A stretch of DNA of 64,000 nucleotides. Source: Macrostomum lignano (lineage: Eukaryota). Location: the NCBI GenBank assembly GCA_002269645.1, contig NIVC01002473.1, positions 1 through 64,000 on the forward strand. Reading direction: 5' to 3'. The notes under the pieces are model-generated. The model was not told the DNA's origin. It searched no databases and worked only from the letters and a program-made list of their open reading frames with translations. Positions 2,537-55,300 of the stretch are shown here, in pieces. The first letter of the stretch is position 1, and every line of letters begins with the position of its first letter. The position numbers and the translations under genes are program-made.

Positions 2537-3103
2537 TCAGTTTGAAAGCAAGCAAGCTAATAGGGAACGGTCTGATTGTAGCATATGCTTAGACTTTGCT
2601 CCGCTGAGCACAAATGAGCCATTGTGAAAAAGCGTACACTTGCAGTATTGAAGCTGACAAACTAAAGCAGTAAAACTTTCAGGTTCATATTTCGCATTCG
2701 GTAGCACTTCACAGAGGTTTCTTAGTGATAGAGCCTTGGGCAAGTCTATTTTTCCATAAGCAGTAATAGTCTTAATTCGGACACAAACGGATTGACGAGG
2801 CAGCAGTTGAGGCGGAACTCTGCGATGCAGCATAGCCACGAAGCGACGGGCAGCCTTGACTGAGGCCGAGTAGCTCCGGGCGCCACAGATACTCAGTTGT
2901 CCAGTCGGATAGAGCAACAGAGTCACTCTGGGATTCCGCATCCTCTTGATGAGCACTCGGGGCCAGACGGGGCGATAGATGACATGAGCCATGCTGAGAG
3001 CCAGTTCCCGCAGAGGCAACTGGGCACCCCTGCCTCCAGCCAGCCTCAGATCCACGCCGCCAACCAGATTGGTCACTCGCAGGGCTGTCGCAGGTGTACT
3101 CAT
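2537..3103 (-). CDS. TATA-box-binding protein (TBP)-like protein, element-encoded, 188 aa, intronless
   Basis: Two TBP core repeats. Repeat 1, TNLVGGVDL...LIKRMRNPRVTLLLYPTGQLSICGARSYSASVKAARRF, matches TBP QNIVSTVNL...[38 protein letters not shown]. Repeat 2, YEPESFTALV...CTLFHNGSFVLSGAKS, matches YEPELFPGLI...VLLIFVSGKVVLTGAK. Confidence 0.88.
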   Translation of the reverse strand: MSTPATALRVTNLVGGVDLRLAGGRGAQLPLRELALSMAHVIYRPVWPRVLIKRMRNPRVTLLLYPTGQLSICGARSYSASVKAARRFVAMLHRRVPPQLLPRQSVCVRIKTITAYGKIDLPKALSLRNLCEVLPNAKYEPESFTALVCQLQYCKCTLFHNGSFVLSGAKSKHMLQSDRSLLACLLSN

Positions 3104-3617
3104 TTAGAGAGTCCTTTCTGTCAGTGGTGCTGTCTTTGAGAGCCTTTGAGTGGTGCGGGCACACCTCGCTTCTTAAGTTGATACAGAACTTTGGCTTCAG
3201 CCAGTTGTAGTAGAGCAATACATTTTTCACTGCACAACCAGTATCAGATGCTTGAATCAAAGGTGATCCCAGATCCTCTAGGTTGTACACCTGTCTGCCA
3301 AGCAGCTCAGTCAGAAAGATGGACTTTTTCACCCCGCTTGTCCAGGTGGGGCCGTAAGCAATGTTTAGAATGTCATTTGCCAAATGCATGTACGATCGGG
3401 ATCCATCTGTCCACTTGAAATGATGCAAATTCTTTGAGAGCTTTCTGTAATGCACCTGCATCTCAGGTGAGATTCGCTCCCATGAGAACGGAGAGGCGTA
3501 CACGTGATGAGTGATATGGTAACTGCCTGCCCGGACTTGGGCAATGGCTAGCTCCTTCACAACGAAATCTCTGCTCGATCTCTCGCGTGGGAAGCCTTGG
3601 AAGTCAATATAGTTCAT
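3104..3617 (-). CDS. Polinton accessory protein, possible DnaQ/DEDD-like nuclease fold; annotated ORF reads through to 2772 over the TBP gene
   Basis: IDFQGF...FVVKELAI...LHHFKWTDG...VYNLEDLGSP...CAVKNV is a pattern I associate with Polinton-linked proteins. The fold assignment is inference and the true stop is uncertain. Confidence 0.5.
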
Positions 3618-3657
3618 GATCGGATGGTTTCAAGATGCCTGATATCGGGAAGCCGAC

Positions 3658-4349
3658 TCAGTTCCCCTTCTTAAATAGTTTTTTCCTGTTCAGCTGTAGC
3701 CAAGCTCTCCCACTCCCGAATCCTTTAACTGTATGATGAGCAGGGGCGGCCTCTGGAGAAACAGCAGGTTTAGAAATTAGCTGCCTAACTGACTTTCCTA
3801 TGGCCGAAGCTGGGATGTTAAGCTTTTTATCTTGGAGCAATGAGACAAACTCACTCCAGCCCACCGGCTCGCTGGCACATTTCGAATCCCTCACGGCACT
3901 GTGAAACAAATCCAGGATGTTTGAGGAGGGTATTGTCTTCCCACAAATTTGCGCCTCGCCATTTTCGGACACCCGAATCAGAGAAGGATTGCCAGATAGG
4001 ATGGCCCATAGACTGCGGGCTCTCGCTTTAAACTTCTGCGGCACGGATTGGGTGATCTTTTCCCCCAGCTGCTTGGTGCAATATCAGTTTTCAGCATCTT
4101 TGCATCACTCGCAGGTACCGCATCATCCTTTCCAGTCCGCTTGCGCTTGGCCAGCAAACTCTTCATCGCATCATGGTACATGGCAGCTTTCACATCGTCT
4201 GGGCAATCCTCGGCAAGCAAAATATCATTGCATTTCCTCTGCGCATATCTCACAGCAGTGTCGAGTTCAGACTCAACTGGCTTCAAATTCTGTGTGAGCA
4301 TGTCGTATTCTGACTTGGGGATCAGAACCATTTCTGAGAACTTATTCAT
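3658..4349 (-). CDS. Conserved Polinton protein of unknown function (one frameshift near 4080)
   Basis: N-part MVLIP...DILLAEDCPDDVKAAMYHDAM and C-part KARARSLW...GEAQICGKTIPSSNILDL...PVGWSEFVSLL...NIPASAIG resemble a recurrent Polinton gene; the halves join as KQLGEKITQSVPQKFKAR. Confidence 0.65.
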
Positions 4350-4689
4350 TTTGTTTCTTTTTCTTCACTAGCTTTATTAGAATGTAGAGAATTTTGATAA
4401 AACCCGTATTTAGCAGATCCGCAGCTCTTCTATGTGTAGAAATTTTGCGGATTATTTGCTTTTGCTTCACTAGCGCTGCCTTTTCAGTGAGTGAGAACGA
4501 CAGAGTGTTTTGCAATAGGTTATAGCAGGCCTCAATGAGAAATTCATGTACTGCTTTTGGACCCGCTCTGATCAACAGACGTTTAAAGCTGATGGAATAT
4601 TTCGGTGAGGCGAGAACATCAAACAAACTTTCATGTGAGTCGAATGTTTCCATTATCATTAGTGTTGCAGAATATAGAGCAAATGGCAA
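4342..4689 (-). CDS. Small conserved Polinton protein (putative structural/membrane-associated)
   Basis: LLIRAGPKAVHEFLIEACYNLLQNTL...KQKQIIRKI...GFI resembles the small gene commonly found next to the ATPase; it overlaps the next gene by 8 nt. Confidence 0.55.
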   Translation of the reverse strand: MPFALYSATLMIMETFDSHESLFDVLASPKYSISFKRLLIRAGPKAVHEFLIEACYNLLQNTLSFSLTEKAALVKQKQIIRKISTHRRAADLLNTGFIKILYILIKLVKKKKQNE

Positions 4690-4706
4690 AATCTCGGCTG
4701 TTATTC

Positions 4707-5359
4707 TTAAGTGTAAACCAGGTGGGGTCGCTGATTGGGCAGGATTCGAGCCCGGACCCGCAGCTCATCAGGGGTGGAAGGGTGAAAATCCAGGAGCAGG
4801 TAGGCTCCCCTGCCGTGCGATGTCACGTGCTTGAACACTGACAGCAGAAAGCCGGGCTTCTCAGCAAAACACTGCCTGCCCAGCGCCGCAATCTGCAGCT
4901 GGTCTCTGGGTTCTTCATGATCACAAAGTACATCGCATTCAGACTCATTGTTCGCAACTCCTTCCCTTTAAAAAATACATTTTGGGTCAGCATAACCAGA
5001 AAGCAGGGCAAATGATGGGCAATTCCAGTGAAAACATTTCGCATTGCAGCAGAATTGGAAGTTTCTTCAATCAGGTCATCAAATACAACCAGGTCATTGG
5101 GTCTCAGTGCGGTCTCGATACTGCTGGGAAATCCCTGCTGCAAGTGCACGCCGAGACTGCTGAGCTCAGAGTGTGCTGCTTGTGAAATTCCGTAGTACCA
5201 CAGAACTCTCCCAGGCTTCACATCAAACATGACATCCTTGTATTGTATCAGATGTTTCACGAAGGTTGTCTTTCCTGCATTTGTAGGCCCGCTGACAATC
5301 ATGCAGCTTCCTTGTCGCAGGCGCACATCATAACAGTTTATCCGCTCACGTGTTTCCAT
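4707..5359 (-). CDS. A32/FtsK-like genome packaging ATPase (1-nt frameshift at ~4908-4910)
   Basis: Walker A SGPTNAGKT, Walker B LVVFDDL, AHH, LTQNVF and RTMSLNA. Adding one C gives KNPRDQLQIAALGRQ...AYLLLDFHP...ELRVRARILP...VYT-stop at 4707. Confidence 0.93.
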
Positions 5360-5392
5360 CGCCTGTTGAGCTAAATCCTTGATTTTAAAAGT

Positions 5393-5911
5393 CTAATTAA
5401 ATTTATTTTTTCTTAAGCAACTCTCAAACCTTTGCAGAATTCTTTCATTCAAGTGGCTCTGCTGATTTGCATGGAGGTGCCGCAGAACCCACTCAAACGA
5501 GCGCTTGAAACGAAACTTTTGATAGGCAAACAAGAGACAGAACAAACCGCATTTAGCAGAGTTGCAGCTCTGAATTCGATTCACATTGCTACGTAAGTAG
5601 AATGGAGAATACCAAAAGGATTTCAGTGCTCTGTGAATGATCTCTAAAGTGCTTGAGTCCCAGCCCAGAGAGTTAAAGAGTTCTATGGAATTCTCCTTAT
5701 TGGCATAACAAACCACCCAGTGACCAAAGGACGAGCCGTACTGAAGCAGAAAGAAAATAAACCTACATCGAGATAAATTTCTTTTGAGAGTTGCTCGCTG
5801 AATAAAGTTTAAAGCATAAGATGTTTTATTTATTGAATTCAAGACAATAATTAAATAGTTATTTTGTGGCAAAAAGCTTTTAGCCAGTTTAAGCAGTTGA
5901 AAAGCATCCAT
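5393..5911 (-). CDS. Adenain-like cysteine maturation protease
   Basis: GHWV (His), ELFNSLG (Asn at the usual acidic position) and IQSCNSAKCGLFC (oxyanion Gln, catalytic Cys). Confidence 0.9.
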   Translation of the reverse strand: MDAFQLLKLAKSFLPQNNYLIIVLNSINKTSYALNFIQRATLKRNLSRCRFIFFLLQYGSSFGHWVVCYANKENSIELFNSLGWDSSTLEIIHRALKSFWYSPFYLRSNVNRIQSCNSAKCGLFCLLFAYQKFRFKRSFEWVLRHLHANQQSHLNERILQRFESCLRKNKFN

Positions 5912-5934
5912 ATTAGCGTTGCGCCAGCGTACTC

Positions 5935-7217
5935 CTAGGATGGAAAATCTAGCAGAATCTCCCTGTGCTTCGTGACCTCAATCAGTGAGTCATACAGGCA
6001 CATAACAATCAGAGATACAGGCTCCTCCAGGGCCTGTCGGAAGCGAATCTCCAGCCGCAAATTTCCCTCCTTCTGTCCGTACCACAGGGCCGCTCCCTCA
6101 GGCGTGAGATCGAATGCGAAAGCTGTGTTGCCGTTGGAGAACAACTGGTAGGGGACCCACGGAACCGAGTTGGTAGGGCTGGCAGACTGACAGCTTTTCA
6201 GGTAGTGCAAGTACTCTCTCACGAATGAATTATTCTCAGGTGCAAATGCAGCGTGGCACATGGCTTCACCACCTTTCTTTAGTGCTAGCTGGCTGAGGTT
6301 GAAGCTCTGGAACTCGAAGGGGCTGGAATGGTGATGGCCATTGAAGGCTCGGTGGTTCACGAAGACCAGCATAACGAACTTCGGCAGTTTGCCATGGGTG
6401 AATCCTTCAATGTTTTTTGACTGAATTCCCTGGGTAGAATGAAGTTTTGCATTTCGGTTCGCTCGATGGGGTAAAGTGCGTTCTGATTGGTAAGTCCCTG
6501 CTCATGCGCTAGGCTGATGTGAGGCGCCACTTTGACTCGGCGCAGGTTCAGAATACAATGGGAAATTTCAATTCGGTAGGCTGTGTTGTTCTCATCTGGG
6601 GTTCGGATGGCAAATGCAGCTTCACTGGGCATCAGCTTGATGTGCAGGTGTAAATTGTTCAGCAGCAGAACAGGACACTGGAAGATGTCGCTGAGCAGCG
6701 GTCCCGCATACTCCACCCAGCGGGACTCCCTGTGTCTCTCGGCATGCCCCTCAGCAGCAGTTTCGGGTTCCAGGAATCCGGCGGGGTAGAAATTTAACTG
6801 CTGAGCATCGGATGAGCTCATGAGAGCTTTTAGGTAGGCATGGTAGGGGTAGAGCTGGTCTCCGCCAGAGACAATGCGCTGGTTGATGCTCACGATTACA
6901 TCTGAGAATGCCGTAGATAGGACAAAGTTTTCTGGGTGCACCCCACTGTCTCTGCGCTCAGTGACAACTCCATCGGCATTCCGAACCTCCTCCCTCATCA
7001 AAGCCCCGCCAAGCCGGACTAGGCGACAGCGAATATACAGGAATGAGCTCAGCAGATCAGTGTACTCATCAGCCGATGGATGGCAGTCGAATTCAATTGG
7101 TGAGTTAGTAGAAATAGAGTTCACGGGGTGAATATCAACATACGTTGATTTTTCAATAGCAGTCTGCAGCACGGGGGACTTGAACAAATCGAGTCTCGGG
7201 TTGAATCCGTAAGCCAT
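5935..7217 (-). CDS. Double jelly-roll major capsid protein (1-nt frameshift near 6400-6434)
   Basis: N-terminal LDLFKSPVLQTAIE...SPIEF...YTDL and C-terminal FNG...SPFEF...FAFDLTP...GNLRLEIRF; the halves rejoin as IEGFTHGKLPKFVMLVF. Confidence 0.9.
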
Positions 7218-7219
7218 TG

Positions 7220-7636
7220 CTATGAGAGTGAGTCCAGAACACGCTTCACAGTTTCTTTGCCCACTTTTTGTTTTCCTTTGCCTGTTTTCTTGGTCTGTGT
7301 TTTAGTCGTTCTTTTCTTAGGTTGCTTGCTTGTTCTGACCTTGCTCGTTTTGCGTGCTTCGCCACTTTTTTCCTTCTTCTTCATGCGCACCTGCTTTTTA
7401 TTCACCTTTTTAGCCTGTCCTTGATTTCCTATGTTTCTATTACTCGTACTATTGCTTCTGCTGCTACTGCTGGTTTGTACAGGCTTTGATGCTAATGATG
7501 ATGATGATGTTATGGAAGGTGCTGGAGGAGGCTGGTAAGTCATTATTCCAGGAAAACTCCCGCAGCCATAGAGCATGGACTTTTCATTTCCCGTCCGAGT
7601 CCCTGAATACTGCCGAATCAGCTGCTGATAGTTCAT
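7220..7636 (-). CDS. Basic, K/R-rich putative core (DNA-condensing) protein
   Basis: Lies between penton and MCP; has a Gly-containing N-terminus (LYGCG) and a very lysine-rich C-terminal half. The function is inference. Confidence 0.5.
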   Translation of the reverse strand: MNYQQLIRQYSGTRTGNEKSMLYGCGSFPGIMTYQPPPAPSITSSSSLASKPVQTSSSSRSNSTSNRNIGNQGQAKKVNKKQVRMKKKEKSGEARKTSKVRTSKQPKKRTTKTQTKKTGKGKQKVGKETVKRVLDSLS

Positions 7637-8442
7637 TGCATTGGTCTCTCACGTATCAGAATTGTGAGCAGAACAGGGCTGCCGCTATGAGCAGTCAGTG
7701 AGAAGCCAAAGATGTCTCGCAGTTGAACTCGAATGCTGTGTAGAAAATTTGTTTTCTGAATGGGGAAGAAAACTGTTTTCTTAAACACTTTGCTCCAGTA
7801 GCTTCCCCATCCGGCTTCAGGATTCATGTTCACAGTTCGCAGCAGGGAATTCCAGTTGCAATTAGTTGACTCCACAATGCTACAATGCACGTTGATCAGA
7901 TTGGTGGGCGGGCAGCCAATGTGGTACATGGAAACTTGGCGCCCAGGTGGAATTTTCACGGACTGATTTCCGAATCCCAGCCACTGCAGAATTTTACTTG
8001 ATGGAAGGAATAATTCTGCTCGAGCCGTGTTGTTGAGCACTACCGTTCTCAATTCTTGGATCTCAAACTTTATGCCAATATCTCTAGCGCTGCTCCGCCC
8101 CATTAAACCAGACTCATCAGCCTCCATTTCAGACTCCCTCTCACTCATTGCATCGAAGAACAGTGACTCAGAGTTGGCCAGCAGCTCATTCATGCGCTCC
8201 ACCAACTCCTCCACTCTAGCAAAGCGTCCGGGTTGAAGAACCAAGGCCTCATGCTCTCTTCCATCTGAGACAGTGAAGCAGTAAGGCTCGTCAACATTGA
8301 ACCATGCAGCAGGCAGATGGATTTCAGCCAGACCTGCCTCATAGTCCACATTTCGATCCAAGTAAATAGGTGAAGGCAGGTGAAAATGAAAGTCAGCAGG
8401 AGTACCTTCAGCATTTTCGCTGTTAATGATGATGCTTCTCAT
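7633..8442 (-). CDS. Minor capsid protein (penton, single jelly-roll); likely ATG at 8442
   Basis: DFHFHLPSPIYL...YEAGLAEIHLPAAWFNV at the N-terminus; INVHCSIV...LLRTV...SIRVQLRDIFG at the C-terminus. Confidence 0.8.
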   Translation of the reverse strand: MRSIIINSENAEGTPADFHFHLPSPIYLDRNVDYEAGLAEIHLPAAWFNVDEPYCFTVSDGREHEALVLQPGRFARVEELVERMNELLANSESLFFDAMSERESEMEADESGLMGRSSARDIGIKFEIQELRTVVLNNTARAELFLPSSKILQWLGFGNQSVKIPPGRQVSMYHIGCPPTNLINVHCSIVESTNCNWNSLLRTVNMNPEAGWGSYWSKVFKKTVFFPIQKTNFLHSIRVQLRDIFGFSLTAHSGSPVLLTILIRERPMQ

Positions 8443-8472
8443 AATTGGGAATGGCTGCACAATGTCGGCATC

Positions 8473-9540
8473 TTACACTTTTCTTAAGTCCTTCTCATCC
8501 ACCCAGTCAGTGGAGTCGTAGCCGGCCCACTTGACCAGATATCGGATCTTTCCCTGCCGCTTCTCAGTCTTCAAAATCTTTTCAATCACATACAGCCGCT
8601 GCGACTCCGGAACGGCCTGCAGTTCATGCTCGTGAAAAAGCCCACGAATCTCTTCTCCTTTCATGTCTTTTATCTTGTACATGTAGGGATAATGCTTTGG
8701 AGCTCTGGACACCACCGTGTACACTTCTTCGCTCCAGTTGGCCTTGTACCCTTTTCTAAAAAGCCTGGGTGCATTGGAAATCCGCACAGACTGGTTTTCG
8801 CTGAACTTTGGCTTTCCCAGCTTTTCCACAGTTTCAATCGCTTTCCCGTCATATAGGCTCATCCAGACCTCGGACTCGTTCTCCTGGCTGACATTCGTTG
8901 GGGCCATTCGTATGCTTCTGTGGTATGTTTTGTTGTAGGACTTCACTAGCTTAGGCAACACATCAAGCCAATGCAGAGTGCTGTTGTGAGTGAAGTAGCG
9001 CCACATTTTGCTCTTTAAAGTTCGGTTCCATCGTTCAATGACAGCCGCCTTCTGCTCACTGTTGGTTGGGAATGCCAGGATTCCCCTTTCCATACAGCAT
9101 TGGCGAAAAGTAGAGTTGATAAACTCTTTCCCCTGATCAGTGCGAACAGTGCGCGGTTGCCGCTTTGAACTTCTTAATATGCTCTCGAATGCCGACTTCA
9201 CTTCAATAGAAGACTTGTTCTTTAATGCCCTCGCCCATCCGTACTTGGACAGCACATCAATGCATGTTAGAATATACCTGTAGCCGTTATTATACTTGGA
9301 AAAAGGAATCATCTCCACCAGATCCAACTCCCATTGGTCATCAATACTTCGAACTATGATTGGGGCCCTCGGATAATTCCTCCTTGCTGGCTTATGTAAT
9401 GTGTAGACTGTCTGATCGTTAAGCCAGTTTTTCGCAGCTTTTTCACTCACTCGGATACCCTGCGTGCGAACTTCATTAATAAATTTATTGCAGCCAGAAA
9501 AGCTTGCTGGCTGCTCAGGGTTAAAGTAAATCTTTTCCAT
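8473..9540 (-). CDS. Retroviral-like (rve) DDE integrase with C-terminal chromodomain
   Basis: WELDL, IDVLSKY, TDQGKEF and IERWNRTLK; C-terminal YVIEKIL...YLVKWAGYD..DWVDEKDL is a chromodomain. ORF is uninterrupted. Confidence 0.95.
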   Translation of the reverse strand: MEKIYFNPEQPASFSGCNKFINEVRTQGIRVSEKAAKNWLNDQTVYTLHKPARRNYPRAPIIVRSIDDQWELDLVEMIPFSKYNNGYRYILTCIDVLSKYGWARALKNKSSIEVKSAFESILRSSKRQPRTVRTDQGKEFINSTFRQCCMERGILAFPTNSEQKAAVIERWNRTLKSKMWRYFTHNSTLHWLDVLPKLVKSYNKTYHRSIRMAPTNVSQENESEVWMSLYDGKAIETVEKLGKPKFSENQSVRISNAPRLFRKGYKANWSEEVYTVVSRAPKHYPYMYKIKDMKGEEIRGLFHEHELQAVPESQRLYVIEKILKTEKRQGKIRYLVKWAGYDSTDWVDEKDLRKV

Positions 9541-9760
9541 TTTTAATTAGAGAAAAAATTAAACTCATTTCGCATTCTTAAGTTCACCAGTAAACTAGCA
9601 TAACTATAGAGAGAGATGCTTATTTTATTTTATTTTTAATTTTAAACGAGCTCATTTAATAGGACATTAATGAATAAGCTGAAAAAGCTGGATAAATAGA
9701 ACTGTTAGACATCAATACAGATGGCATAGCAATGTCCACGCATAGTCACTTAAAAAGTTA

Positions 9761-10489
9761 TCAAGCACTTTTGTCTGCGTCACCATCCTCTCCACCATTG
9801 ATCACTTTGGGCAACTTGATTGCATTTTGCCTGCGCAGGGGCCACGGAAGCTTTCGTTTGTGACAGCCGCTGTTGCCGAGCCCTGAAGCAGCACGGAACC
9901 GGTACCACAGTGGGTCGTGCGACAGGTCGCTGTCTTGCTGGGGTATGCGCCCGACTGAAGTCTCTGGCAGAACAGGCGAGCTGGTTGCATTGTCCGACTC
10001 GACGATGCGCAGCCTCTTCTCTTCTTCTTCTTCTTCTTCGCTGACCGGCAGAGTTTCTTGGCCCTCATGCTTGATGTCCTCGGCCTCCAGCTGATACTCA
10101 CTCTCCGCCGACTTCTCTCGCAGCTCGTTGTCGATCCACTCGGCCTTCTTCCAGAGTTCTCCCCATAGACGGGGAGTCAGCGCCACTGAGTTCCGCCGCA
10201 GATAATCCTCTGTACAGTCTTCCGGCAGGCGCTTCAGCCAGATGATACCCCTGCTGACCACAACGAGTTTATCAAAGCCAAGCTTGACTGTGACGCTGTG
10301 CCGATTGACTGCCGAGTGCACAAGCTGGCGTTTCAGCTGCTTCAACTTCTCCCATTGGTATGCATTGAGGTTAAAGCCAGGGATGCCCGCTCTGAGCCCG
10401 CTTTCAGAGGAGAAGAAACGTCGGATTGCAATAAAGCGATGACCTTCGTACTCTTGCACTTGAACTTTGAAGCCGTCACAGAGATCCAT
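9761..10489 (-). CDS. PC4/Sub1-like ssDNA-binding/coactivator protein with probable tandem PC4 domains and an acidic tail
   Basis: KVQVQEYEGHRFIAIRRFF...GIPGFNLNAYQWEKLK matches PC4 YVSVRDFKGKVLIDIREYW...GRKGISLNPEQWSQLK; a second degenerate copy ends SVALTPRLWGEL. Confidence 0.75.
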   Translation of the reverse strand: MDLCDGFKVQVQEYEGHRFIAIRRFFSSESGLRAGIPGFNLNAYQWEKLKQLKRQLVHSAVNRHSVTVKLGFDKLVVVSRGIIWLKRLPEDCTEDYLRRNSVALTPRLWGELWKKAEWIDNELREKSAESEYQLEAEDIKHEGQETLPVSEEEEEEEKRLRIVESDNATSSPVLPETSVGRIPQQDSDLSHDPLWYRFRAASGLGNSGCHKRKLPWPLRRQNAIKLPKVINGGEDGDADKSA

Positions 10490-47634: not shown

Positions 47635-49704
47635 ATGGACTTCCTCTCTGCAGTCAGTAGTTTTATTCAAAATGCCAACAAAGTATTGCTTGAATTGAAG
47701 GACACTTTTGCAGGTGAGTAAGCCTTCCTTTGTAATCGTTAGCTGTTTTCTCAAAAAGTCTGTTTTTAATTATCAATTGGTGATTTAAGTGCAAAATAAA
47801 TTTCCAATATAATAATTAAAAATCGTTAGTTGAAGATCAAATTAAGTTAGAAACTGAAAATTTCAACTATTCACAGGTAAATTGATACCCTGCAAACATT
47901 CTATGTCTACTAATTTTTATCTTTTAAATTTACCTTTCAGATGATAGTATAGAAAACTTTGACAAAAGATTGCTGACTTGTGGAAGATTGATTGGCTTAT
48001 ATTCATCTATGCTTAAACAGTAAGTATATTTGCAGTTTAGGAAAAAATTAATAGCATTATATTATATATTAATGATCAATAAAAAACTTTTTTATATATA
48101 TGATAATTTTTAGATGCAGTGTCAACTCATTCAAGGAATTAGATTCCCTGTTCAAAGCAAATTTTGCACAATATGAGGTTCAGGAAGTATATGAAAATCT
48201 TTTGCAATTTGAGGTAACCACATTTTTATTGTACTAAAATATTAATTTCACAAATTTTTTTATATGATTATTTTTCTTGATTTTTTATAGGAATCGTGGG
48301 ATGAATTTCTCACTAAGCTTGATTCAAAATATCTACAGCAGTGGCTACCTCAAAGTCCTGGATCCAATGCTACTGATGTCCTTCAAATGCAACTGGTCTG
48401 TGCAACGACTAAGCAGCAGCTCCCACTCAGCGATCTGATTGGCCAAGGAACTAAATTTCTTCTGCTAGTTTTCCTACGCCATTTAGCCTGACATCCATGA
48501 CAGCAGCATGCGGTAGAGTTGCAGCTGCGGCTTGTGAGTAGTTTTATATTAAGAGATTGTTAAGAGCCTTTTAGTTTTGAAAGTTTGCATACCAAATCAT
48601 TTTCATAGTTCCCCTATGAAATGGCAATTTTATTTTTCTGGCAGCTAACCTTTAAAATGTATGCACCTCTTTAGGTTTCATTAATATACTAAATCTCCTG
48701 CTATTAATGTATACTCATGCATGATGTTGGGTTATCTGAATGACCTTTCATTCTGGTCTTGAGAATGGTCTTGAGAGGGGTTGCTCCACTTAGAGTAAGT
48801 GTCGTTTTGTAAAAACAGTCCAGAGATTAGTCAGTAATCAAGGTAAAGGTTAATCAAACTTAAGGGTCCCAAGGGTCTTGGTGGGCGCCCCTGTCTCTTG
48901 GTGGGCGCTCCTGTCTCTTGCTGGGTGCCCCTGTCTCTTGGTGGACGTCCTTGTCTTTTAGCGGACACCCTTTGTCTCTTAGTGGGAGCCCCTGTCTTTT
49001 GGTGGGCGCCCTCCATCTTTTGGTGGGCCCCGCCCCTGCCTCTTGGTGGGCTACCGCTATCTCGGGCTTGTTAATTTCTTGTCATAAATCCAGCTTGTTG
49101 GCCTTTTTAAGTTTCGTTTTCCGATCACGCCCCCGTGTTACGCCACTGCGTGCCGTATTAACTCTGCGATTTTGACACGTTGACTGACCAACTGCCATGG
49201 ATAATATATTATTTACAATAACCCAAATCTTACACACCCGCGCAGCCAAGCCTGCAAGCTGCGCACTGCCGCCCGCTGCTGATCAGCTTCGCTTCCGATC
49301 CAGACGTCATCCGCAACTGGTTAACTCGCGTCTGCCTAGTTGACAAAACTCCAAATAGTACATGCACAGAGACATCCGATGATCCTTCAGTAGGTGCCTT
49401 CGCCGACCCGGAACGTGACCTGTATCGACGCTTTGGTTTGAATCGTTCCGCTGTCAACAGCTGGGGCGTAGCGGCTCTTCATCACTACGCCCAACTGTCC
49501 GCTTGTGGTGTTAAAACGGACAAACCGGCCGATGTGAACACAGAGGATCTGCTGCAGATGGGTGGCGATTTTCTACTGAAAGTAGAATACAACGGATCAG
49601 GTAGTGATGCGGAGTGTCGGCTTGTGTTTAGTCAGGCAGGCGGATCGTCTACTGACCGACCGAGTATTGATACTATTCTAGCCAAGTGTCGCGAGTACAT
49701 GTAG
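47635..49704 (+). CDS. SELENOL: Selenoprotein L (thioredoxin-like, UxxU). Exons 47635-47713, 47941-48019, 48114-48213, 48291-48533, 49246-49704; 319 aa; Sec codons at 48489-48491 and 48498-48500
   Basis: GT-AG exons in phase translate to ENLLQFEESWDEFL...LLLVFLRHLA-U-HP-U-QQH...DPERDLYRRFGL...QMGGDFLL...DRPSIDTIL, matching the SelL LRHF(G/A)ULPURDH pattern. A SECIS lies downstream. Confidence 0.93.
48870..49035. repeat. ~20-bp minisatellite (CCCTGTCTCTTGGTGGGCGC) in SELENOL intron 4
   Basis: Read directly. Confidence 0.85.
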
Positions 49705-49819
49705 TGTAGCTAGCGTAGCTTATTAAATAACTTGTCGCTTTATGTTATGCTGGTGCTTTTTTACCGGAAAATATGAACACTTAGTAGAATTGACTACAGA
49801 AGTACAGAACACGCGCCCT

Positions 49820-50455
49820 AGGATAAATATGTTTGTAGGGACTACTGTCTGTACAGGATGTTTGTAAGGACAGCTGTCTGTACAAGATGTTTGCAAAGAC
49901 TGCTGTCTGTACATGTAGATGTTTGCAAGGATTGCTGTTTGTACAAGATGTTTGCAAGGACTGCTGTCTGTACAAGATGTTTGCAAGGATTGCTGTTTGT
50001 ACAAAATGTTTGCAAGGACTGCTGTCTGTACATGTAGATGTTTGTAAGGACTGCTGTCTGTACAAGATGTTTGCAAAGACTGCTGTCGGTACAAGATGTT
50101 TGTAAGGACTGCTGTCTGTACAAAATGTTTGTAAGGACTGCTGTCTGTACAAAATGTTTGTAAGGACTGCTGTCTGTACAAAATGTTTGTAAGGACTGCT
50201 GTCTGTACAGGATTTTTGTAAGGACTGTTGATTGTACAAGATGTTTGCAAGGACTGCTGTCTGTACATGTACAAGATGTTTGTAAGGACTGCTGTCTGTA
50301 CAAAATGTTTGTAAGGACTGCTGTCGGTACAAGATGTTTGTAAGGACTGCTGTCTGTACAAAATGTTTGTAAGGACTGCTGTCGGTACAAGATGTTTGTA
50401 AGGACTGCTGTCTGTACAGGATGTTTTGAAAGGACTGCTGTCGGTACAAGATGTT
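49820..50455. repeat. ~29-bp minisatellite (GTACAAGATGTTTGCAAGGACTGCTGTCT) downstream of the SELENOL stop
   Basis: Read directly. Confidence 0.95.
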
Positions 50456-50549
50456 GATGTTGCAGTCAAATACCAATATCCATTCTGCCATTCCAAAATA
50501 GTAGACTTATTACATGTATTACATTACACGCAGTTGACATATATATAGC

Positions 50550-50610
50550 GCAATAATGACGGTCTCGTAACGGAAAAACTTTCTATAGTTCGTTGAGACC
50601 CGATCGGACA
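50550..50610 (+). promoter_or_regulatory. Type II SECIS element for SELENOL
   Basis: AUGAC (50556-60) and CGAU (50601-04) form the quartet. GGUCUC/GAGACC and AACG/CGUU form helix II, with unpaired AAA and an AACU/AGUU apical mini-stem. AATAAA occurs at ~50676. Helix I is not clearly resolved by eye. Confidence 0.85.
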
Positions 50611-51474
50611 CAGTCTGAATGTAATCATTATATTTACACTTCAGATGCGTTATATTTGTCAATTGTTTTCTTCATAATAAATCCAGAATAAAAATACACT
50701 CAACTGTAAACTGATGTAAATCTTCAGTAATAAAAGCATGCACGACAATATTAATTTATTTTTATTCATTTTCAGAATGTAACTAAATATACTCTTACAA
50801 GATATTTGTTATAAACAACCGCAGCGGTAAAACTTGCACTGACTACAAACTGTTATAACGGCGATTGCATTAGATAGAAAAAGGAAAAGGGAAGTCTGAT
50901 TTAAGGACATTTAAAGGGTAAAATGCCGGACACAAAGTTGATAAGTACAGGGAGTGCTATCAGAAATGTTTATAAAAGATTGGATAATCAATGATTAGAA
51001 TACTGTTTCTTCTACATGTATATTGGAGTCGATGTCAGTTACACATGTAGTGATTATCTATGTACTGACACTGCAGTTATCGTATAGTTATAGTTATTCG
51101 TACAGCAAAGCTTAAAACGAATCTAACTATTCGAAAACAGAAGCAAACAGAAATCAAATAAGGAAGCTGCTGGTATTACAGAGTTAATGTGTTAGGCACA
51201 AGTTGTTATGTTTAAAGTTACATTAATAACCTGACTATTTTGACGGTGCAAAATTGAATAGTAAAATTAGCAAAATTGAAACGTAAAACAGCAGCATACT
51301 AGATGAAGATGAGATCGACTGAGTGAAAGGGTAAGACAGGTCAAACTACTTGCTAGAAAAAAGCGTGTGCCACAGCGAGATCAACATGGAAATTATGCTG
51401 CACAGGGGATGCAACCAGAGTGGACAGATGAGCTAGAAACAGCAGTGACGACGAGACGGAAGTATTGAAAACTA

Positions 51475-52290
51475 GAGGTGGACAGAGTAGATAGAGCAGA
51501 GTGGATAGAGTAGAGAGTAGATAGAGTAGAGTGGACAGAGTAGGGAGTAGATAGAGTAGAGTGGACAGAGTAGGGAATAGATAGAGTAGAGTGGATAGAG
51601 TAGGGAATAGATAGAGTAGAGTGGACAGAGTAGAGAGTAGATAGAGTAGAGTGGATAGAGTAGGGAATAGATAGAGTAGAGTGGACAGAGTAGGGAGTAA
51701 ATAGAGTAGAGTGAACAGAGTAGGGAGTAGATAGAGTAGAGTGGATAGAGTAGGGAGTAGATAGAGTAGAGTGGACAGAGTAGGGAGTAGATAGAGTAGA
51801 GTGGATAGAGTAGGGAGCAGATAGAGTAGAGTGGACAGGGTAGGGAGTAGATAGAGTAGAGTGGACAGAGTAGAGAGTAGATAGAGTAGAGTGGACAGAG
51901 TAGGGAGTAGATAGAGTAGAGTGGATAGAGTAGGGAGCAGATAGAGTAGAGTGGACAGGGTAGGGAGTAGATAGAGTAGAGTGGACAGAGTAGAGTGGAC
52001 AGAGTAGGGAGTAGATAGAGTAGAGTGGACAGGGTAGGAAGTAGATAGAATAGAGTGGACAGGGTAGGGAGTAGATAGAGTAGAGTGAACAGAGTAGGGA
52101 GTAGATAGAGTAGAGTGAACAGAGTAGGGAGTAGATAGAGTAGAGTGGACAGGGTAGGGAGTAGATAGAGTAGAGTGGACAGGGTAGGGAGTAGATAGAG
52201 TAGAGTGGACAGGGTAGGGAGTAGATAGAGTAGAGTGAACAGAGTAGGGAGTAGATAGAGTAGAGTGGACAGGGTAGGGAGTAGATAGAG
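51475..52290. repeat. 30-bp purine-rich minisatellite (GATAGAGTAGAGTGGACAGAGTAGGGAGTA)
   Basis: Read directly. Confidence 0.95.
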
Positions 52291-52354
52291 TAGAGTGGAC
52301 AATACAGAAAGAGCCAAAAGCAGAAGTGAAACAGCTGATGAAAAAAGCTCAAGA

Positions 52355-55300
52355 TCAGACCATAGAAGACCAGAGCCAGACCAGCACATTGCAAGTGGCG
52401 GCAATGGCCAGACACAGCAGGAGTCGCCGGGGCCGCAGCCAGGGCCACAGAAGCCACGCAGCCTTGCCCTCGGTGGAGCCGGCCGACTCCAAACCTGCGG
52501 TGCTGCCACCGTAGCGGGTGATTCTCAGCACGAACACCGCTCTGGACAGCACCAGGAACAGAGCCAGAGCTGCCAGCACCAGGGCTAGGAACAGAGCCAC
52601 CGGGTGTTGATGATGCTGGCTCTTGGAAATCGCGTAAATCCTATTTCGATGTTGATACTCTGCGATTGGAACCTGCATTTGATTTTTTATTTTGAAATTA
52701 CTGATTTTGATTTTGACATGAATGAATTTGCTTTTGACATTACTGATTTTAATTTTGAGATGAATGAACTTGATTTTGACATTACAGATTTTAAATTTTC
52801 ACATTACTGATTTTGATTTGACATTGCTGATTTTGAATTTTGACATTATTGATTTTGAAATTACTGATTTTGATTTTAACACTACTGATTTTGATTTTGA
52901 AACTACTGATTTTGATTTTGACATTACTGATTTTGATTTTGAAACTACTGATTTTGATTTCGACATTACAGATTTAGATTTTGACATTACAGATTTAGAT
53001 TTTGAAACTACTGATTTTGATTTTAACACTACTGATTTTGATTTTGACATTACTGATTTTGATTTGACACTACTGATTTTGATTTTGACATTACTGATTT
53101 TGAAACTACTGATTTTGATTTTGAAACTACTGATTTTGATTTTGACATTACTGATTTTGATTTTGAAACTACTGATTTCGATTTTGACATTACTGATTTT
53201 GATTTGACATTACTGATTTTGAATTTTGACATTACTGATTTTGAAACTACTGATTTTGATTTTGACATTACTCATTTTTTATTTTGACACTACAGATTTT
53301 GATTTTGAAATTACTGTTTTGATTTTGAAACTACTGATTTTGATTTTGACATTACTGATTTTGATTTTGAAATTACTGATTTTGATTTTGAAATTACTGA
53401 TTTTGATTTTGACATTACTCATTTTTTATTTTGACACTACTACTGATTTTGATTCTGACACTACTGATTTTGATTTTGACATTAATGATTTTGATTCTGA
53501 AACTACTGATTTTGATTTTGACACTACTGATTTAGATTTTTGACATTACTGATTTTGATTTTGACATTACAGATTTAGATTTTGACATTACTGATTTAGA
53601 TTTTGACACTACTGATTTTGATTTTACCTTATCTTGATGCTGCTGCTGGGGCCCTCGACGTTTAACAAGGGCTCGACGAAACGACAAGTCGTGATCGGAG
53701 TCCGCATAATCGGTGTCACTTTTCGAGGAGCCAGACCCAGTAGCAGACAAAGGAGCCGCCGTTTGCTTAACGCCAACCATTCGATTTGTTAGCGACTGTT
53801 TCTCTAGTTTTGGAATTTTTCTATTCCTTTTTGGAAGCTTATTCCTTGATCTGTTGCCGGCAGGTGGCGGCGGCCGACAAGAGCCGGGGCCGCTGGCTAC
53901 GCCGACCGGGATGCCGCGAGCTCGCATCCTGCAGCGCTGCTCTTCGATACGGCGCCCAGCGGCTAGCAGGTCGCGAGTGGCCTCCGGTGAGCTCCAGAGA
54001 CGCTCAGCTACTGCGGAAGCGAGAGGCCTGTTGGATTGGTGGGACACGGGGGTGAATGTGTGAAGCTTGTAGCCCAGCTTTATGAACAGGGTTTGTAAGT
54101 GTAATTGAAGCCGTTGAGGACTTTAGGCTGCAATCTGATTTTAAATGATCATGTGGTGCGGAGTTTCTGGGGTTTGAGATGTAGCATTTGCGAGCAATGG
54201 GTTTTAGTTGTGGTATTTCATCAGGATTGGTGTGGGATTCAATGGGATTCGTGTGGGATTCAATATGATAAATTGTGGGATTCAATAGGATGTAGTGTGG
54301 GATTCAATAGAATGGGTGTGGGATTCAATAGGATGGGTGTGGGATTCAATAGGATGGGGTGTGGGATTCAATAGGATGGGTGTGGGATTCAATAAGATGG
54401 GGTGTGGGATTCAATAGAATGGATGTGGGATTCAATAGGATGTGGTGTGGGATTCAATAGGATGTGGTGTGGGATTCAATAGAATGGATGTGGGATTCAA
54501 TAGGATGGGGTGTGGGATTCAATAGGATGTGGTGTGGGATTCAATAGAATGGGTGTGGGATTCAATAGGATGGGGTGTGGGATTCAATAGGATGGGGTGT
54601 GGGATTCAATAAGGTGGGGTGTGGGATTCAATAGGATGGGGTGTGGGATTCAATAGAATGGATGTGGGATTCAATAGGATGTGGTGTGGGATTCAATAGG
54701 ATGTGGTGTGGGATTCAATAGAATGGGTGTGGGATTCAATAGGATGGGGTGTGGGATTCAATAGGATGTGGTGTGGGATTCAATAGGACGGGGTGTGGGA
54801 TTCAATAGAATGGGTGTAGGATTCAATAGGATGGGGTGTGGGATTCAATAGGATGTGGTGTGGGATTCAATAGGATGGGTGTGGGATTCAATAGGATGGG
54901 GTGTGGGATTCAATAGAATGGATGTGGGATTCAATAGGATGTGGTGTGGGATTCAATAGGATGTGGTGTGGGATTCAATAGAATGGATGTGGGATTCAAT
55001 AGGATGGGGTGTGGGATTCAATAGAATGGGTGTGGGATTCAATAGGATGGGTGTAGGATTCAATAGGATGGGGTGTGGGATTCAATAGGATGTGGTGTGG
55101 GATTAGATAGGATGGGGTGTGGGATTCAATAGGATGCGTGTGGGAAAAATGGACAAAAACCGGAGCAAAATCTGGACGACCTCCGGACGAGAGTAGTTTT
55201 TCCGTCCGGAAATTGATCTGGTATTTCATCCGCTCGTTTCTCCGCTGTTCGAGACGGATCTAACCGGATAAAATACCGGATTAAATCTACTTACATCCTC

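What the first reader, a model, noticed from the sequence alone, without database searches (positions are those of the whole stretch)
47635..49704. Hidden selenoprotein L with two selenocysteines (U-H-P-U)
Seen: exon 4 reads CTA CGC CAT TTA GCC TGA CAT CCA TGA CAG CAG CAT, and homology continues in frame through exon 5. The ORF track and standard annotation would truncate or miss it. Known: SelL carries a UxxU motif forming an intramolecular diselenide and is patchily distributed in aquatic animals and bacteria; the usual motif is ULPU. Inference: a His variant and, if the host is a flatworm, possibly a new lineage record. There is also a ~20-aa insert (DKTPNSTCTETSDDPSVG) before DPERDLY.
Basis: partly seen in the sequence, partly recalled or inferred. 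Interest (0 to 1): 0.82.

Follow-up and report, generated by a model that had tools for sequence, protein, structure and literature searches.

The report
Unannotated two-selenocysteine SelL gene in flatworm
The window (Macrostomum lignano genome) holds an intact five-exon selenoprotein L gene with two in-frame UGA (selenocysteine) codons, which public gene models skip; it is an ordinary member of a known family, in a phylum that was thought to have lost it.

Summary
Five GT-AG exons (47635-49704, + strand) splice into a 319-codon frame. Its only internal stops are two TGAs, at codons 153 and 156 (FLRHLA-U-HP-U-QQH).

The protein aligns end to end with selenoprotein L (SelL/SELENOL) relatives. 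Twenty-four intronless metatranscriptome mRNAs and one hemichordate genome carry TGA-x-Pro-TGA at the same place. The consensus is ULPU, so His at x1 is a minor variant.

The host is Macrostomum lignano: UniProt model A0A1I8IZH1 maps here at 98-100% in most segments. That model is a chimera that joins the first six codons directly to exon 5, so the gene really is hidden.

A 2013 survey of three flatworms found no SelL and inferred loss before the flatworm radiation. This locus contradicts that inference.

Two lineage-specific inserts (16 and 9 aa) are real.

The weak point is the SECIS. The only candidate (50556-50604) has a good AUGA/GA core, helix II and an unpaired AA. However, it lies 851 nt past the stop, has no canonical helix I, and gets no Rfam hit. 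Rfam also missed most genuine SelL SECIS elements.

Verdict: a new member of a known kind, of moderate-to-low interest.

The parts
47635..47713 (+). Exon 1 (ATG 47635-47637; MDFLSAVSSFIQNANKVLLELKDTFA, phase 0). An AG (ttcag) lies 5 nt upstream of the ATG and could be a trans-splice or 5'UTR acceptor (inference only).
   Evidence: the N-terminal region aligns with SelL relatives
47941..48019 (+). Exon 2 (79 nt), bordered by tttcag| and |gtaagt
48114..48213 (+). Exon 3 (100 nt), bordered by ttttag| and |gtaacc
48291..48533 (+). Exon 4 (243 nt), which carries the redox motif FLRHLA-U-HP-U-QQH
   Evidence: motif aligned with the ULPU of relatives and with the CxxC of prostamide/PGF synthase
48489..48491 (+). 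First Sec codon (TGA, codon 153)
   Evidence: the homologous TGA is present in the Glandiceps genome and in 24 mRNA loci
48498..48500 (+). Second Sec codon (TGA, codon 156)
48534..49245 (+). Intron 4 (712 nt, gtgagt...cgcgcag), containing a 20-bp minisatellite at 48876-49051
49246..49704 (+). Exon 5 (459 nt): the C-terminal two thirds of the thioredoxin-like domain (QMGGDF, DRPS), ending in stop TAG 49702-49704
   Evidence: (E = 2.4e-9 and weaker to distant relatives; 4e-97 to the M. lignano model)
49342..49395 (+). Lineage-specific insert (about 16 aa, within DKTPNSTCTETSDDPSVG), absent from 16 other SelL sequences
49582..49608 (+). Second lineage-specific insert (VEYNGSGSD, 9 aa)
49829..50455 (+). 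29-bp minisatellite (about 21 copies) in the presumed 3'UTR, between the stop and the SECIS candidate
50556..50604 (+). Candidate SECIS: AUGA-C, helix II (GGUCUCG..AACGG / UCGUUGAGACC), unpaired AAAA starting 13 nt after the core, a 3-bp mini-stem, then C-GA-U. Form-2-like. Helix I is not canonical.
   Evidence: no Rfam hit
50676..50692 (+). Two AATAAA poly(A) signals (50676-50681 and 50687-50692), 72-83 nt after the SECIS candidate. An ATTAAA also lies at 49722-49727, just after the stop.

Best explanation
This is the Macrostomum lignano orthologue of selenoprotein L (SelL/SELENOL). SelL is a thioredoxin-fold, Prx-like2 (AhpC-TSA_2) protein. Its CxxC-equivalent redox centre is encoded by two UGA codons two residues apart (here U-H-P-U).

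Shown here:
- an intact five-exon reading frame;
- both TGAs at the family's conserved positions;
- full-length homology on both sides of them.

Inferred:
- both UGAs are recoded as selenocysteine by the standard eukaryotic machinery (tRNA-Sec, eEFSec, SBP2);
- recoding is directed by one SECIS in the 3'UTR, most likely the hairpin at 50556-50604;
- as shown for vertebrate SelL in the literature, the two Sec residues cycle between diselenide and diselenol in a redox reaction whose substrate is unknown.

Automatic annotation read the TGAs as stops. It therefore built chimeric models that skip exons 2-4.
For: Frame and splice sites.
TGA positions.
Pfam: AhpC-TSA 7.6e-6 and AhpC-TSA_2 5.4e-5; all 9 members of alignment A2, this protein included, hit PF13911.
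Relatives: an exhaustive HMMER search with exon 5 found 46 relatives. The full-length ones carry LLRHxA-[TGA read as W]-x-P-[TGA]-RDH. The cluster of hit P0010 contains NCBI 'selenoprotein L [Biomphalaria glabrata]'.
TGA conservation: 24 intronless metatranscriptome mRNAs have TGA-[L/S]-P-TGA at the aligned position. The Glandiceps talaboti genome reads CTACGCCATTCTGCC TGA CTA CCA TGA.
Alignment: 25-33% identity over about 287 residues to 15 of the 16 loci (19% to L023), including the N-terminal helical region, with no gap at the exon 4/5 junction.
Closest solved structure: prostamide/PGF synthase, with its CxxC under the UxxU.
Host: P0001 (UniRef A0A1I8IZH1, M. lignano) maps to the window at 98-100% in most segments.
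SECIS candidate: it is the only one on the + strand in 49705-53000. It passes a strict filter that gives about 0.025 chance hits per kb in shuffles. The 49-nt segment folds on its own into the SECIS shape.
Literature: two Sec residues, a single SECIS and a diselenide (PMC3316567; PMC13134290).
Against: - No expression or Sec-insertion data could be obtained.
- Rfam SECIS_1 gives no hit, even in a 91-nt search.
- The candidate lacks a canonical helix I.
- It has CGAU instead of the UGAU seen in all relatives' SECIS, and AA at +13 instead of +10 to +12.
- It lies 851 nt after the stop, against 28-61 nt for the SECIS nearest the stop in relatives.
- Its stability is unremarkable (z = -1.47).
- An ATTAAA 18 nt after the stop could end transcripts before the candidate.
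- The flanking residues Q-Q-H differ from the otherwise near-invariant R-[D/E/S]-H.
- Pfam scores are at or below the curated cut-offs.
Confidence: 0.85

Rival explanations
1. The locus is a decaying or silent SelL copy. The UGAs terminate translation, giving at most a 152-residue N-terminal fragment, because no functional SECIS is present.
For: No Rfam SECIS hit. Helix I is non-canonical and the candidate is far from the stop. A minisatellite has expanded in the 3'UTR. The gene sits among retroelement remnants. The active-site flank has diverged, and there are two inserts.
Against: There are no stops or frameshifts in the 163 codons after the second TGA, and all four introns keep GT-AG borders. 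The family's invariant residues downstream are kept (W, D..Y, QMGGDF, DRP). In the second genomic copy, the one nucleotide difference I could infer in exon 5 is synonymous in the SelL frame (anecdotal). Rfam also fails on most genuine SelL SECIS elements.
Confidence: 0.09
2. The two TGAs are assembly or sequencing errors for Cys codons, so the protein is an ordinary CxxC Prx-like2 protein.
For: None directly. Cys forms of selenoproteins are common in general (established knowledge).
Against: It would need two independent errors, both producing TGA, at exactly the two positions that are TGA in 24 other mRNAs and in a hemichordate genome. Both M. lignano gene models avoid exon 4, as expected if both copies carry stops there.
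Confidence: 0.02
3. UGA is a sense codon in the source organism (for example UGA = Cys in Euplotes), or the contig is a contaminant, so no selenocysteine is involved.
For: The gene ends in TAG and has no other TGA in frame.
Against: The window matches M. lignano protein models at 98-100% in most mapped segments across 13 kb. The gene has spliceosomal introns of 77-712 nt. Relatives from many animals, which use the standard code, have TGA only at these two codons.
Confidence: 0.01
4. It belongs to another Prx-like2 subfamily (PRXL2A/B/C or SelU-like) and not to SelL.
For: The best solved structure is PRXL2B, prostamide/PGF synthase. Pfam sees only the generic AhpC/TSA domains.
Against: The PRXL2B match is weak (E = 0.0018) and covers the domain only. 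The SelL-specific N-terminal region of about 120 aa, the RH-x-A-U-x-P-U-x-x-H signature and the QMGGDF/DRPS motifs are shared with SelL sequences along the whole length.
Confidence: 0.03

Closest known systems
Selenoprotein L (SelL / SELENOL) of fishes and aquatic invertebrates (Shchedrina et al. 2007, cited in PMC3473315; PMC3316567; PMC13134290)
   Same: Two UGA codons two residues apart, at the CxxC position of a Prx-like thioredoxin fold. N-terminal helical extension. The signature LLRHxA-U-x-P-U-x-x-H. The QMGGDF and DRPS motifs. About 300-330 residues. An aquatic host.
   Different: His instead of Leu at x1, and Q-Q instead of R-[D/E] after the second Sec. Two inserts (16 and 9 aa). The SECIS candidate is 851 nt from the stop with an atypical helix I, whereas relatives place a canonical AUGA..AA..UGAU element 28-61 nt after the stop. 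It is found in Platyhelminthes, where SelL was reported absent (PMC3828610).
Prostamide/prostaglandin F synthase (PRXL2B, PDB 9us9/9usa)
   Same: Same fold family (AhpC-TSA_2). Its CxxC aligns with the UxxU, and the DE..LY and Q.GG motifs align.
   Different: It has Cys, not Sec. It has no N-terminal extension of about 120 aa. Sequence similarity is very low (E = 0.0018 with a family profile).
Selenoprotein genes mis-annotated in public databases (PMC12822975)
   Same: The in-frame UGA is read as a stop, so models truncate, skip the Sec exon or fuse neighbours. This is seen here for M. lignano A0A1I8IZH1 and A0A1I8FVG9, Biomphalaria KAK6997796.1 and Glandiceps XP_077992630.1.
   Different: Nothing new in kind; these are further examples in invertebrates.

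Membership tests
Selenoprotein L (SELENOL) | Two in-frame UGA codons separated by two codons (UxxU) at the redox-motif position | tested here: met
   TGA at codons 153 and 156. They align column for column with the TGA-x-P-TGA of 24 mRNAs and of the Glandiceps genome, and with the CxxC of PRXL2B.
Selenoprotein L (SELENOL) | Prx-like2 / AhpC-TSA thioredoxin-fold domain | tested here: met
   PF00578 at 26.3 bits (cut-off 26) and PF13911 at 24 bits (cut-off 27) for the single sequence. All 9 aligned family members hit PF13911 at E <= 0.01.
Selenoprotein L (SELENOL) | Full-length orthology, including the N-terminal region and the motifs RHxAUxPU..H, QMGGDF and DRPS | tested here: met
   Alignments A1 and A2 and the 17-sequence MAFFT alignment: 25-33% identity over about 287 aa to 15 of 16 loci, 19% to L023. 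The cluster of hit P0010 contains the NCBI entry 'selenoprotein L'. No phylogeny was built.
Selenoprotein L (SELENOL) | A eukaryotic SECIS element in the 3'UTR that serves both UGAs | tested here: inconclusive
   There is one candidate, at 50556-50604, with an AUGA/GA core, an 11-bp helix II and an unpaired AA. The chance expectation is about 0.025 per kb. Against it: no Rfam SECIS_1 hit, a non-canonical helix I, and no hit from my own models R1 and R2. The controls were insensitive: Rfam found 4 of 19 genuine SelL mRNAs and missed L017 in a 91-nt test, and R2 found 1 of 6 held-out elements.
Selenoprotein L (SELENOL) | Actual selenocysteine insertion and diselenide formation | not testable with these tools
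   This needs 75Se labelling, mass spectrometry or ribosome profiling.
Selenoprotein L (SELENOL) | The host has the Sec-decoding machinery | not tested
   It is not in this window; ARAGORN found no tRNA here. The literature reports 7-19 selenoprotein genes in three other flatworms (PMC3828610), so the machinery is expected.

The most novel reading that the evidence does not exclude
SelL was not lost at the base of Platyhelminthes. It persists, as a Sec-containing gene with a diverged active-site flank (UHPU-QQH), two inserts and an unusually distant, atypical SECIS, in the early-branching macrostomorph M. lignano. The loss would then have happened later, on the lineage leading to planarians and parasitic flatworms. 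Because M. lignano can be manipulated genetically (my own knowledge, not checked here), it would be an invertebrate model in which the function of a diselenide protein could be tested.
Probability: 0.7. Interest if true: 0.4.

Novelty: new member of a known kind. Interest (0 to 1): 0.35.

Why it matters
It corrects a published inference that SelL was lost before flatworms diversified, and so refines the history of selenoprotein loss in the phylum. It flags two chimeric M. lignano gene models and two faulty SelL models in other invertebrates. SelL's substrate and role are still unknown, so a copy in a laboratory flatworm gives a place to knock it down and test function. Beyond that, this is a routine result of the kind that dedicated selenoprotein finders produce.

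Tried and rejected
**Searches that gave little or nothing**
- The search for homologous proteins with the full protein found nothing. With family alignment A1 it found only P0045.
I therefore used exon 5 alone, and no structure prediction was possible.
- Exact look-ups of two exon-5 ORFs found no transcript contigs.
- PDB search with the single sequence found nothing relevant.

**SECIS work**
- Rfam at E <= 10 gave no SECIS over 12 kb, 261 nt or 91 nt.
- An ungapped pattern scan found nothing near the gene.
- I rejected a second SECIS-like site at 49775-49810 by eye: its 3' GA is out of register and its helix II has only 8 bp.
- I considered a 3'UTR intron ending at the AG at 50532-50533, which would bring the SECIS closer to the stop. 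I found no convincing donor, so this stays speculative.
- MAFFT could not align SECIS elements structurally.
- Model R1 (three near-identical seeds) was too specific.
- Model R2 (four loop-trimmed seeds) recovered only 1 of 6 held-out genuine elements and did not score the M. lignano candidate. That result is uninformative.
- I could not locate the Glandiceps SelL SECIS with confidence.

**Other**
- Removing the 16-aa insert as an intron is excluded. All GT..AG combinations in 49320-49393 have lengths that are not multiples of 3 (my reading).
- The original SelL paper (PMC1955791) is not held.

Full report

Yes. The quoted 36-nt string occurs once in the window, at 48474-48509 on the + strand, and in none of 100 shuffles.

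Reading the sequence, I placed five exons: 47635-47713, 47941-48019, 48114-48213, 48291-48533 and 49246-49704. Every intron begins with GT (gtgagt, gtaagt, gtaacc, gtgagt) and ends with AG. Intron lengths are 227, 94, 77 and 712 nt.

The spliced sequence is 960 nt, or 319 codons plus TAG. Its only internal stops are TGA at codon 153 (48489-48491) and codon 156 (48498-48500). This gives ...KFLLLVFLRHLA-U-HP-U-QQHAVELQLRL|PSLQAAH.... My first attempt was off by one base and gave 19 stops, which shows how specific the correct frame is.

**2. What is it?**

- *Domain.* Pfam places residues 125-278 in the AhpC/TSA thioredoxin-like families: PF00578 at 7.6e-6 and PF13911 at 5.4e-5.
- *Relatives.* The word-indexed protein search found nothing. 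An exhaustive HMMER search with exon 5 found 46 relatives. The full-length ones (P0005, P0015, P0035, P0050) read LLRH[FL][AS]-W-[LD]-P-W-RDH. The W stands for a TGA that the source pipelines translated as Trp.
- *Named member.* The cluster of hit P0010 contains the NCBI entry 'selenoprotein L [Biomphalaria glabrata]'.
- *Direct check of the codons.* The Glandiceps talaboti genome reads CTA CGC CAT TCT GCC TGA CTA CCA TGA CGA GAC CAC. A metagenome scan returned 40 loci. Of these, 24 are intronless mRNAs with TGA-[L/S]-P-TGA-R-[D/E/S]-H at the aligned position.
Position x1 also takes S and D, so the His here is a minor variant. The Q-Q after the second Sec, in place of R-[D/E], is a comparable departure.
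- *Extent of homology.* The M. lignano protein aligns with these sequences over about 287 residues. Identity is 25-33% to 15 of the 16 loci and 19% to L023. The alignment includes the N-terminal helical region encoded by exons 1-3 and has no gap at the exon 4/5 junction.
- *Inserts.* Two segments are unique to it: about 16 residues within 49339-49395, and VEYNGSGSD at 49582-49608.
- *Solved structure.* A family profile finds prostamide/prostaglandin F synthase (PRXL2B) as the closest solved structure, with its CxxC under the UxxU.

**3. Host and annotation**

The best hit, P0001, is UniRef A0A1I8IZH1 of Macrostomum lignano. It maps onto the window between 45907 and 58880, at 98-100% identity in most segments, so the window is that genome.

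The model is a chimera. It runs from an upstream retroelement-like ORF into MDFLSA, then jumps straight to exon 5 (PSLQAAH...). It then splices out of the last codon into downstream genes.

A second M. lignano model (A0A1I8FVG9, 3935 aa) covers a paralogous copy. It reads the start of exon 5 in the wrong frame and then shifts into the right one. The single nucleotide difference I could infer there is synonymous in the SelL frame. That is only an anecdotal hint of constraint.

The gene really is hidden from standard annotation. The same fault affects Biomphalaria KAK6997796.1, which lacks the UxxU segment. It also affects Glandiceps XP_077992630.1, where a repeat-derived stretch replaces the segment.

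**4. How it most likely works**

Shown: the reading frame, the two TGAs at conserved positions, and homology on both sides of them.

Inferred from established knowledge of eukaryotic Sec decoding and from the SelL literature:
- Both UGAs are read as Sec under the direction of one 3'UTR SECIS (PMC3316567).
- The two selenols form a reversible diselenide in a peroxiredoxin-like fold (PMC13134290).
- The substrate is unknown.

**5. The SECIS, the weak link**

*For the candidate.* On the + strand between the stop and 53000, a permissive scan finds exactly one candidate: 50556-50604, AUGAC-GGUCUCG-ua-ACGG-AAAA-(ACU-uucuau-AGU)-UCGUUGAGACC-CGAU.
- It has the AUGA/GA quartet with a U.U pair, an 11-bp helix II, unpaired As 13 nt after the core, and a form-2 mini-stem.
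- It folds this way without any constraint.
- Two AATAAA signals follow 72-83 nt later.
- Under a strict filter, dinucleotide shuffles give about 1.6 hits per 64-kb strand. That means roughly 0.02-0.04 expected by chance in the 1-1.5 kb downstream of the gene.

*Against it.*
- There is no canonical helix I.
- It has CGAU where nine relatives' elements all have UGAU.
- It lies 851 nt after the stop, where relatives place the element nearest the stop 28-61 nt away.
- Its thermodynamic z-score is modest.
- Rfam SECIS_1 gives no hit at any search size.

*Calibration of the negative results.*
- Rfam detected a SECIS in only 4 of 19 genuine SelL mRNAs.
- In a matched 91-nt test it missed the textbook-looking element of L017, while scoring L025 at 21.4 bits.
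- My own covariance models were no better.

The SECIS is therefore plausible but unproven. An ATTAAA 18 nt after the stop could produce transcripts that lack it.

**6. Comparison with what is known, and novelty**

The locus meets the sequence-level definition of SelL. The SECIS test is inconclusive and Sec insertion cannot be tested here.

A selenoproteome survey of Schmidtea, Schistosoma and Taenia found no SelL. [quoted passage not shown] No held paper links Macrostomum with SelL.

This is therefore a new lineage record and moves the inferred loss to a later branch. Named relatives among my hits come from molluscs, a coral, amphioxus and a hemichordate, in line with the family's known aquatic distribution.

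It is a new member of a known kind. It is useful for annotation and for the history of selenoproteins in flatworms, but it is not surprising to a specialist.

**7. Verdict**

- Observation: confirmed.
- Confidence that this is a functional two-Sec SelL gene: about 0.85.
- Confidence that 50556-50604 is its SECIS: about 0.6.
- Interest: 0.35.

Noticed in passing
window 2537-10489, minus strand: Thirteen back-to-back intronless ORFs. Pfam hits: TBP-like (2537-3103, 1.3e-22), adenovirus-type cysteine protease (5393-5911), rve integrase plus chromodomain (8473-9540) and PC4-like (9761-10489). The other eight ORFs scanned have no significant Pfam hit. It looks like an integrated Maverick/Polinton-like or other virus-like element.
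   Followed up: partly
window 41782-43104 (+), within the GC-rich block 42-46 kb: A 440-aa ORF with RNase H and RVT_3 domains: a retroelement remnant just upstream of SelL. The chimeric UniProt model starts in this region.
   Followed up: partly
window 55171-55229, minus strand: A second hairpin passes the strict SECIS filter (AUGAA...AA...AGAU, -15 kcal/mol), next to a 22-bp minisatellite. I did not look for an associated UGA-containing gene. Shuffle rates suggest it may be chance.
   Followed up: no
whole window: Very dense minisatellites: 47 TRF rows with score >= 100 and periods of 4-134 nt (one row of 232). One lies in SelL intron 4 (48876-49051) and one in its 3'UTR (49829-50455). GC content swings from 0.26 to 0.63 between 2-kb bins.
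   Followed up: no
L007:965-1026 and 1213-1273; L012:583-644 and 832-892; L013:950-1011 and 1199-1259: Three related metatranscriptome SelL mRNAs each carry two SECIS_1-type elements about 250 nt apart. Vertebrate SelL is described as using a single SECIS (PMC3316567).
   Followed up: partly
L001:12785-12949 (Glandiceps talaboti, OZ203266.1): The NCBI model XP_077992630.1 replaces the UxxU part of the Sec exon with a repetitive CGLCMEAWNIYR stretch, although the genome encodes LVFLRHSA-U-LP-U-RDH. The Biomphalaria 'selenoprotein L' KAK6997796.1 likewise lacks the motif.
   Followed up: partly
window 47626-47634: An acceptor-like ttcag lies 5 nt before the SelL ATG. It could be a spliced-leader trans-splice site or a 5'UTR intron acceptor (speculation).
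   Followed up: no
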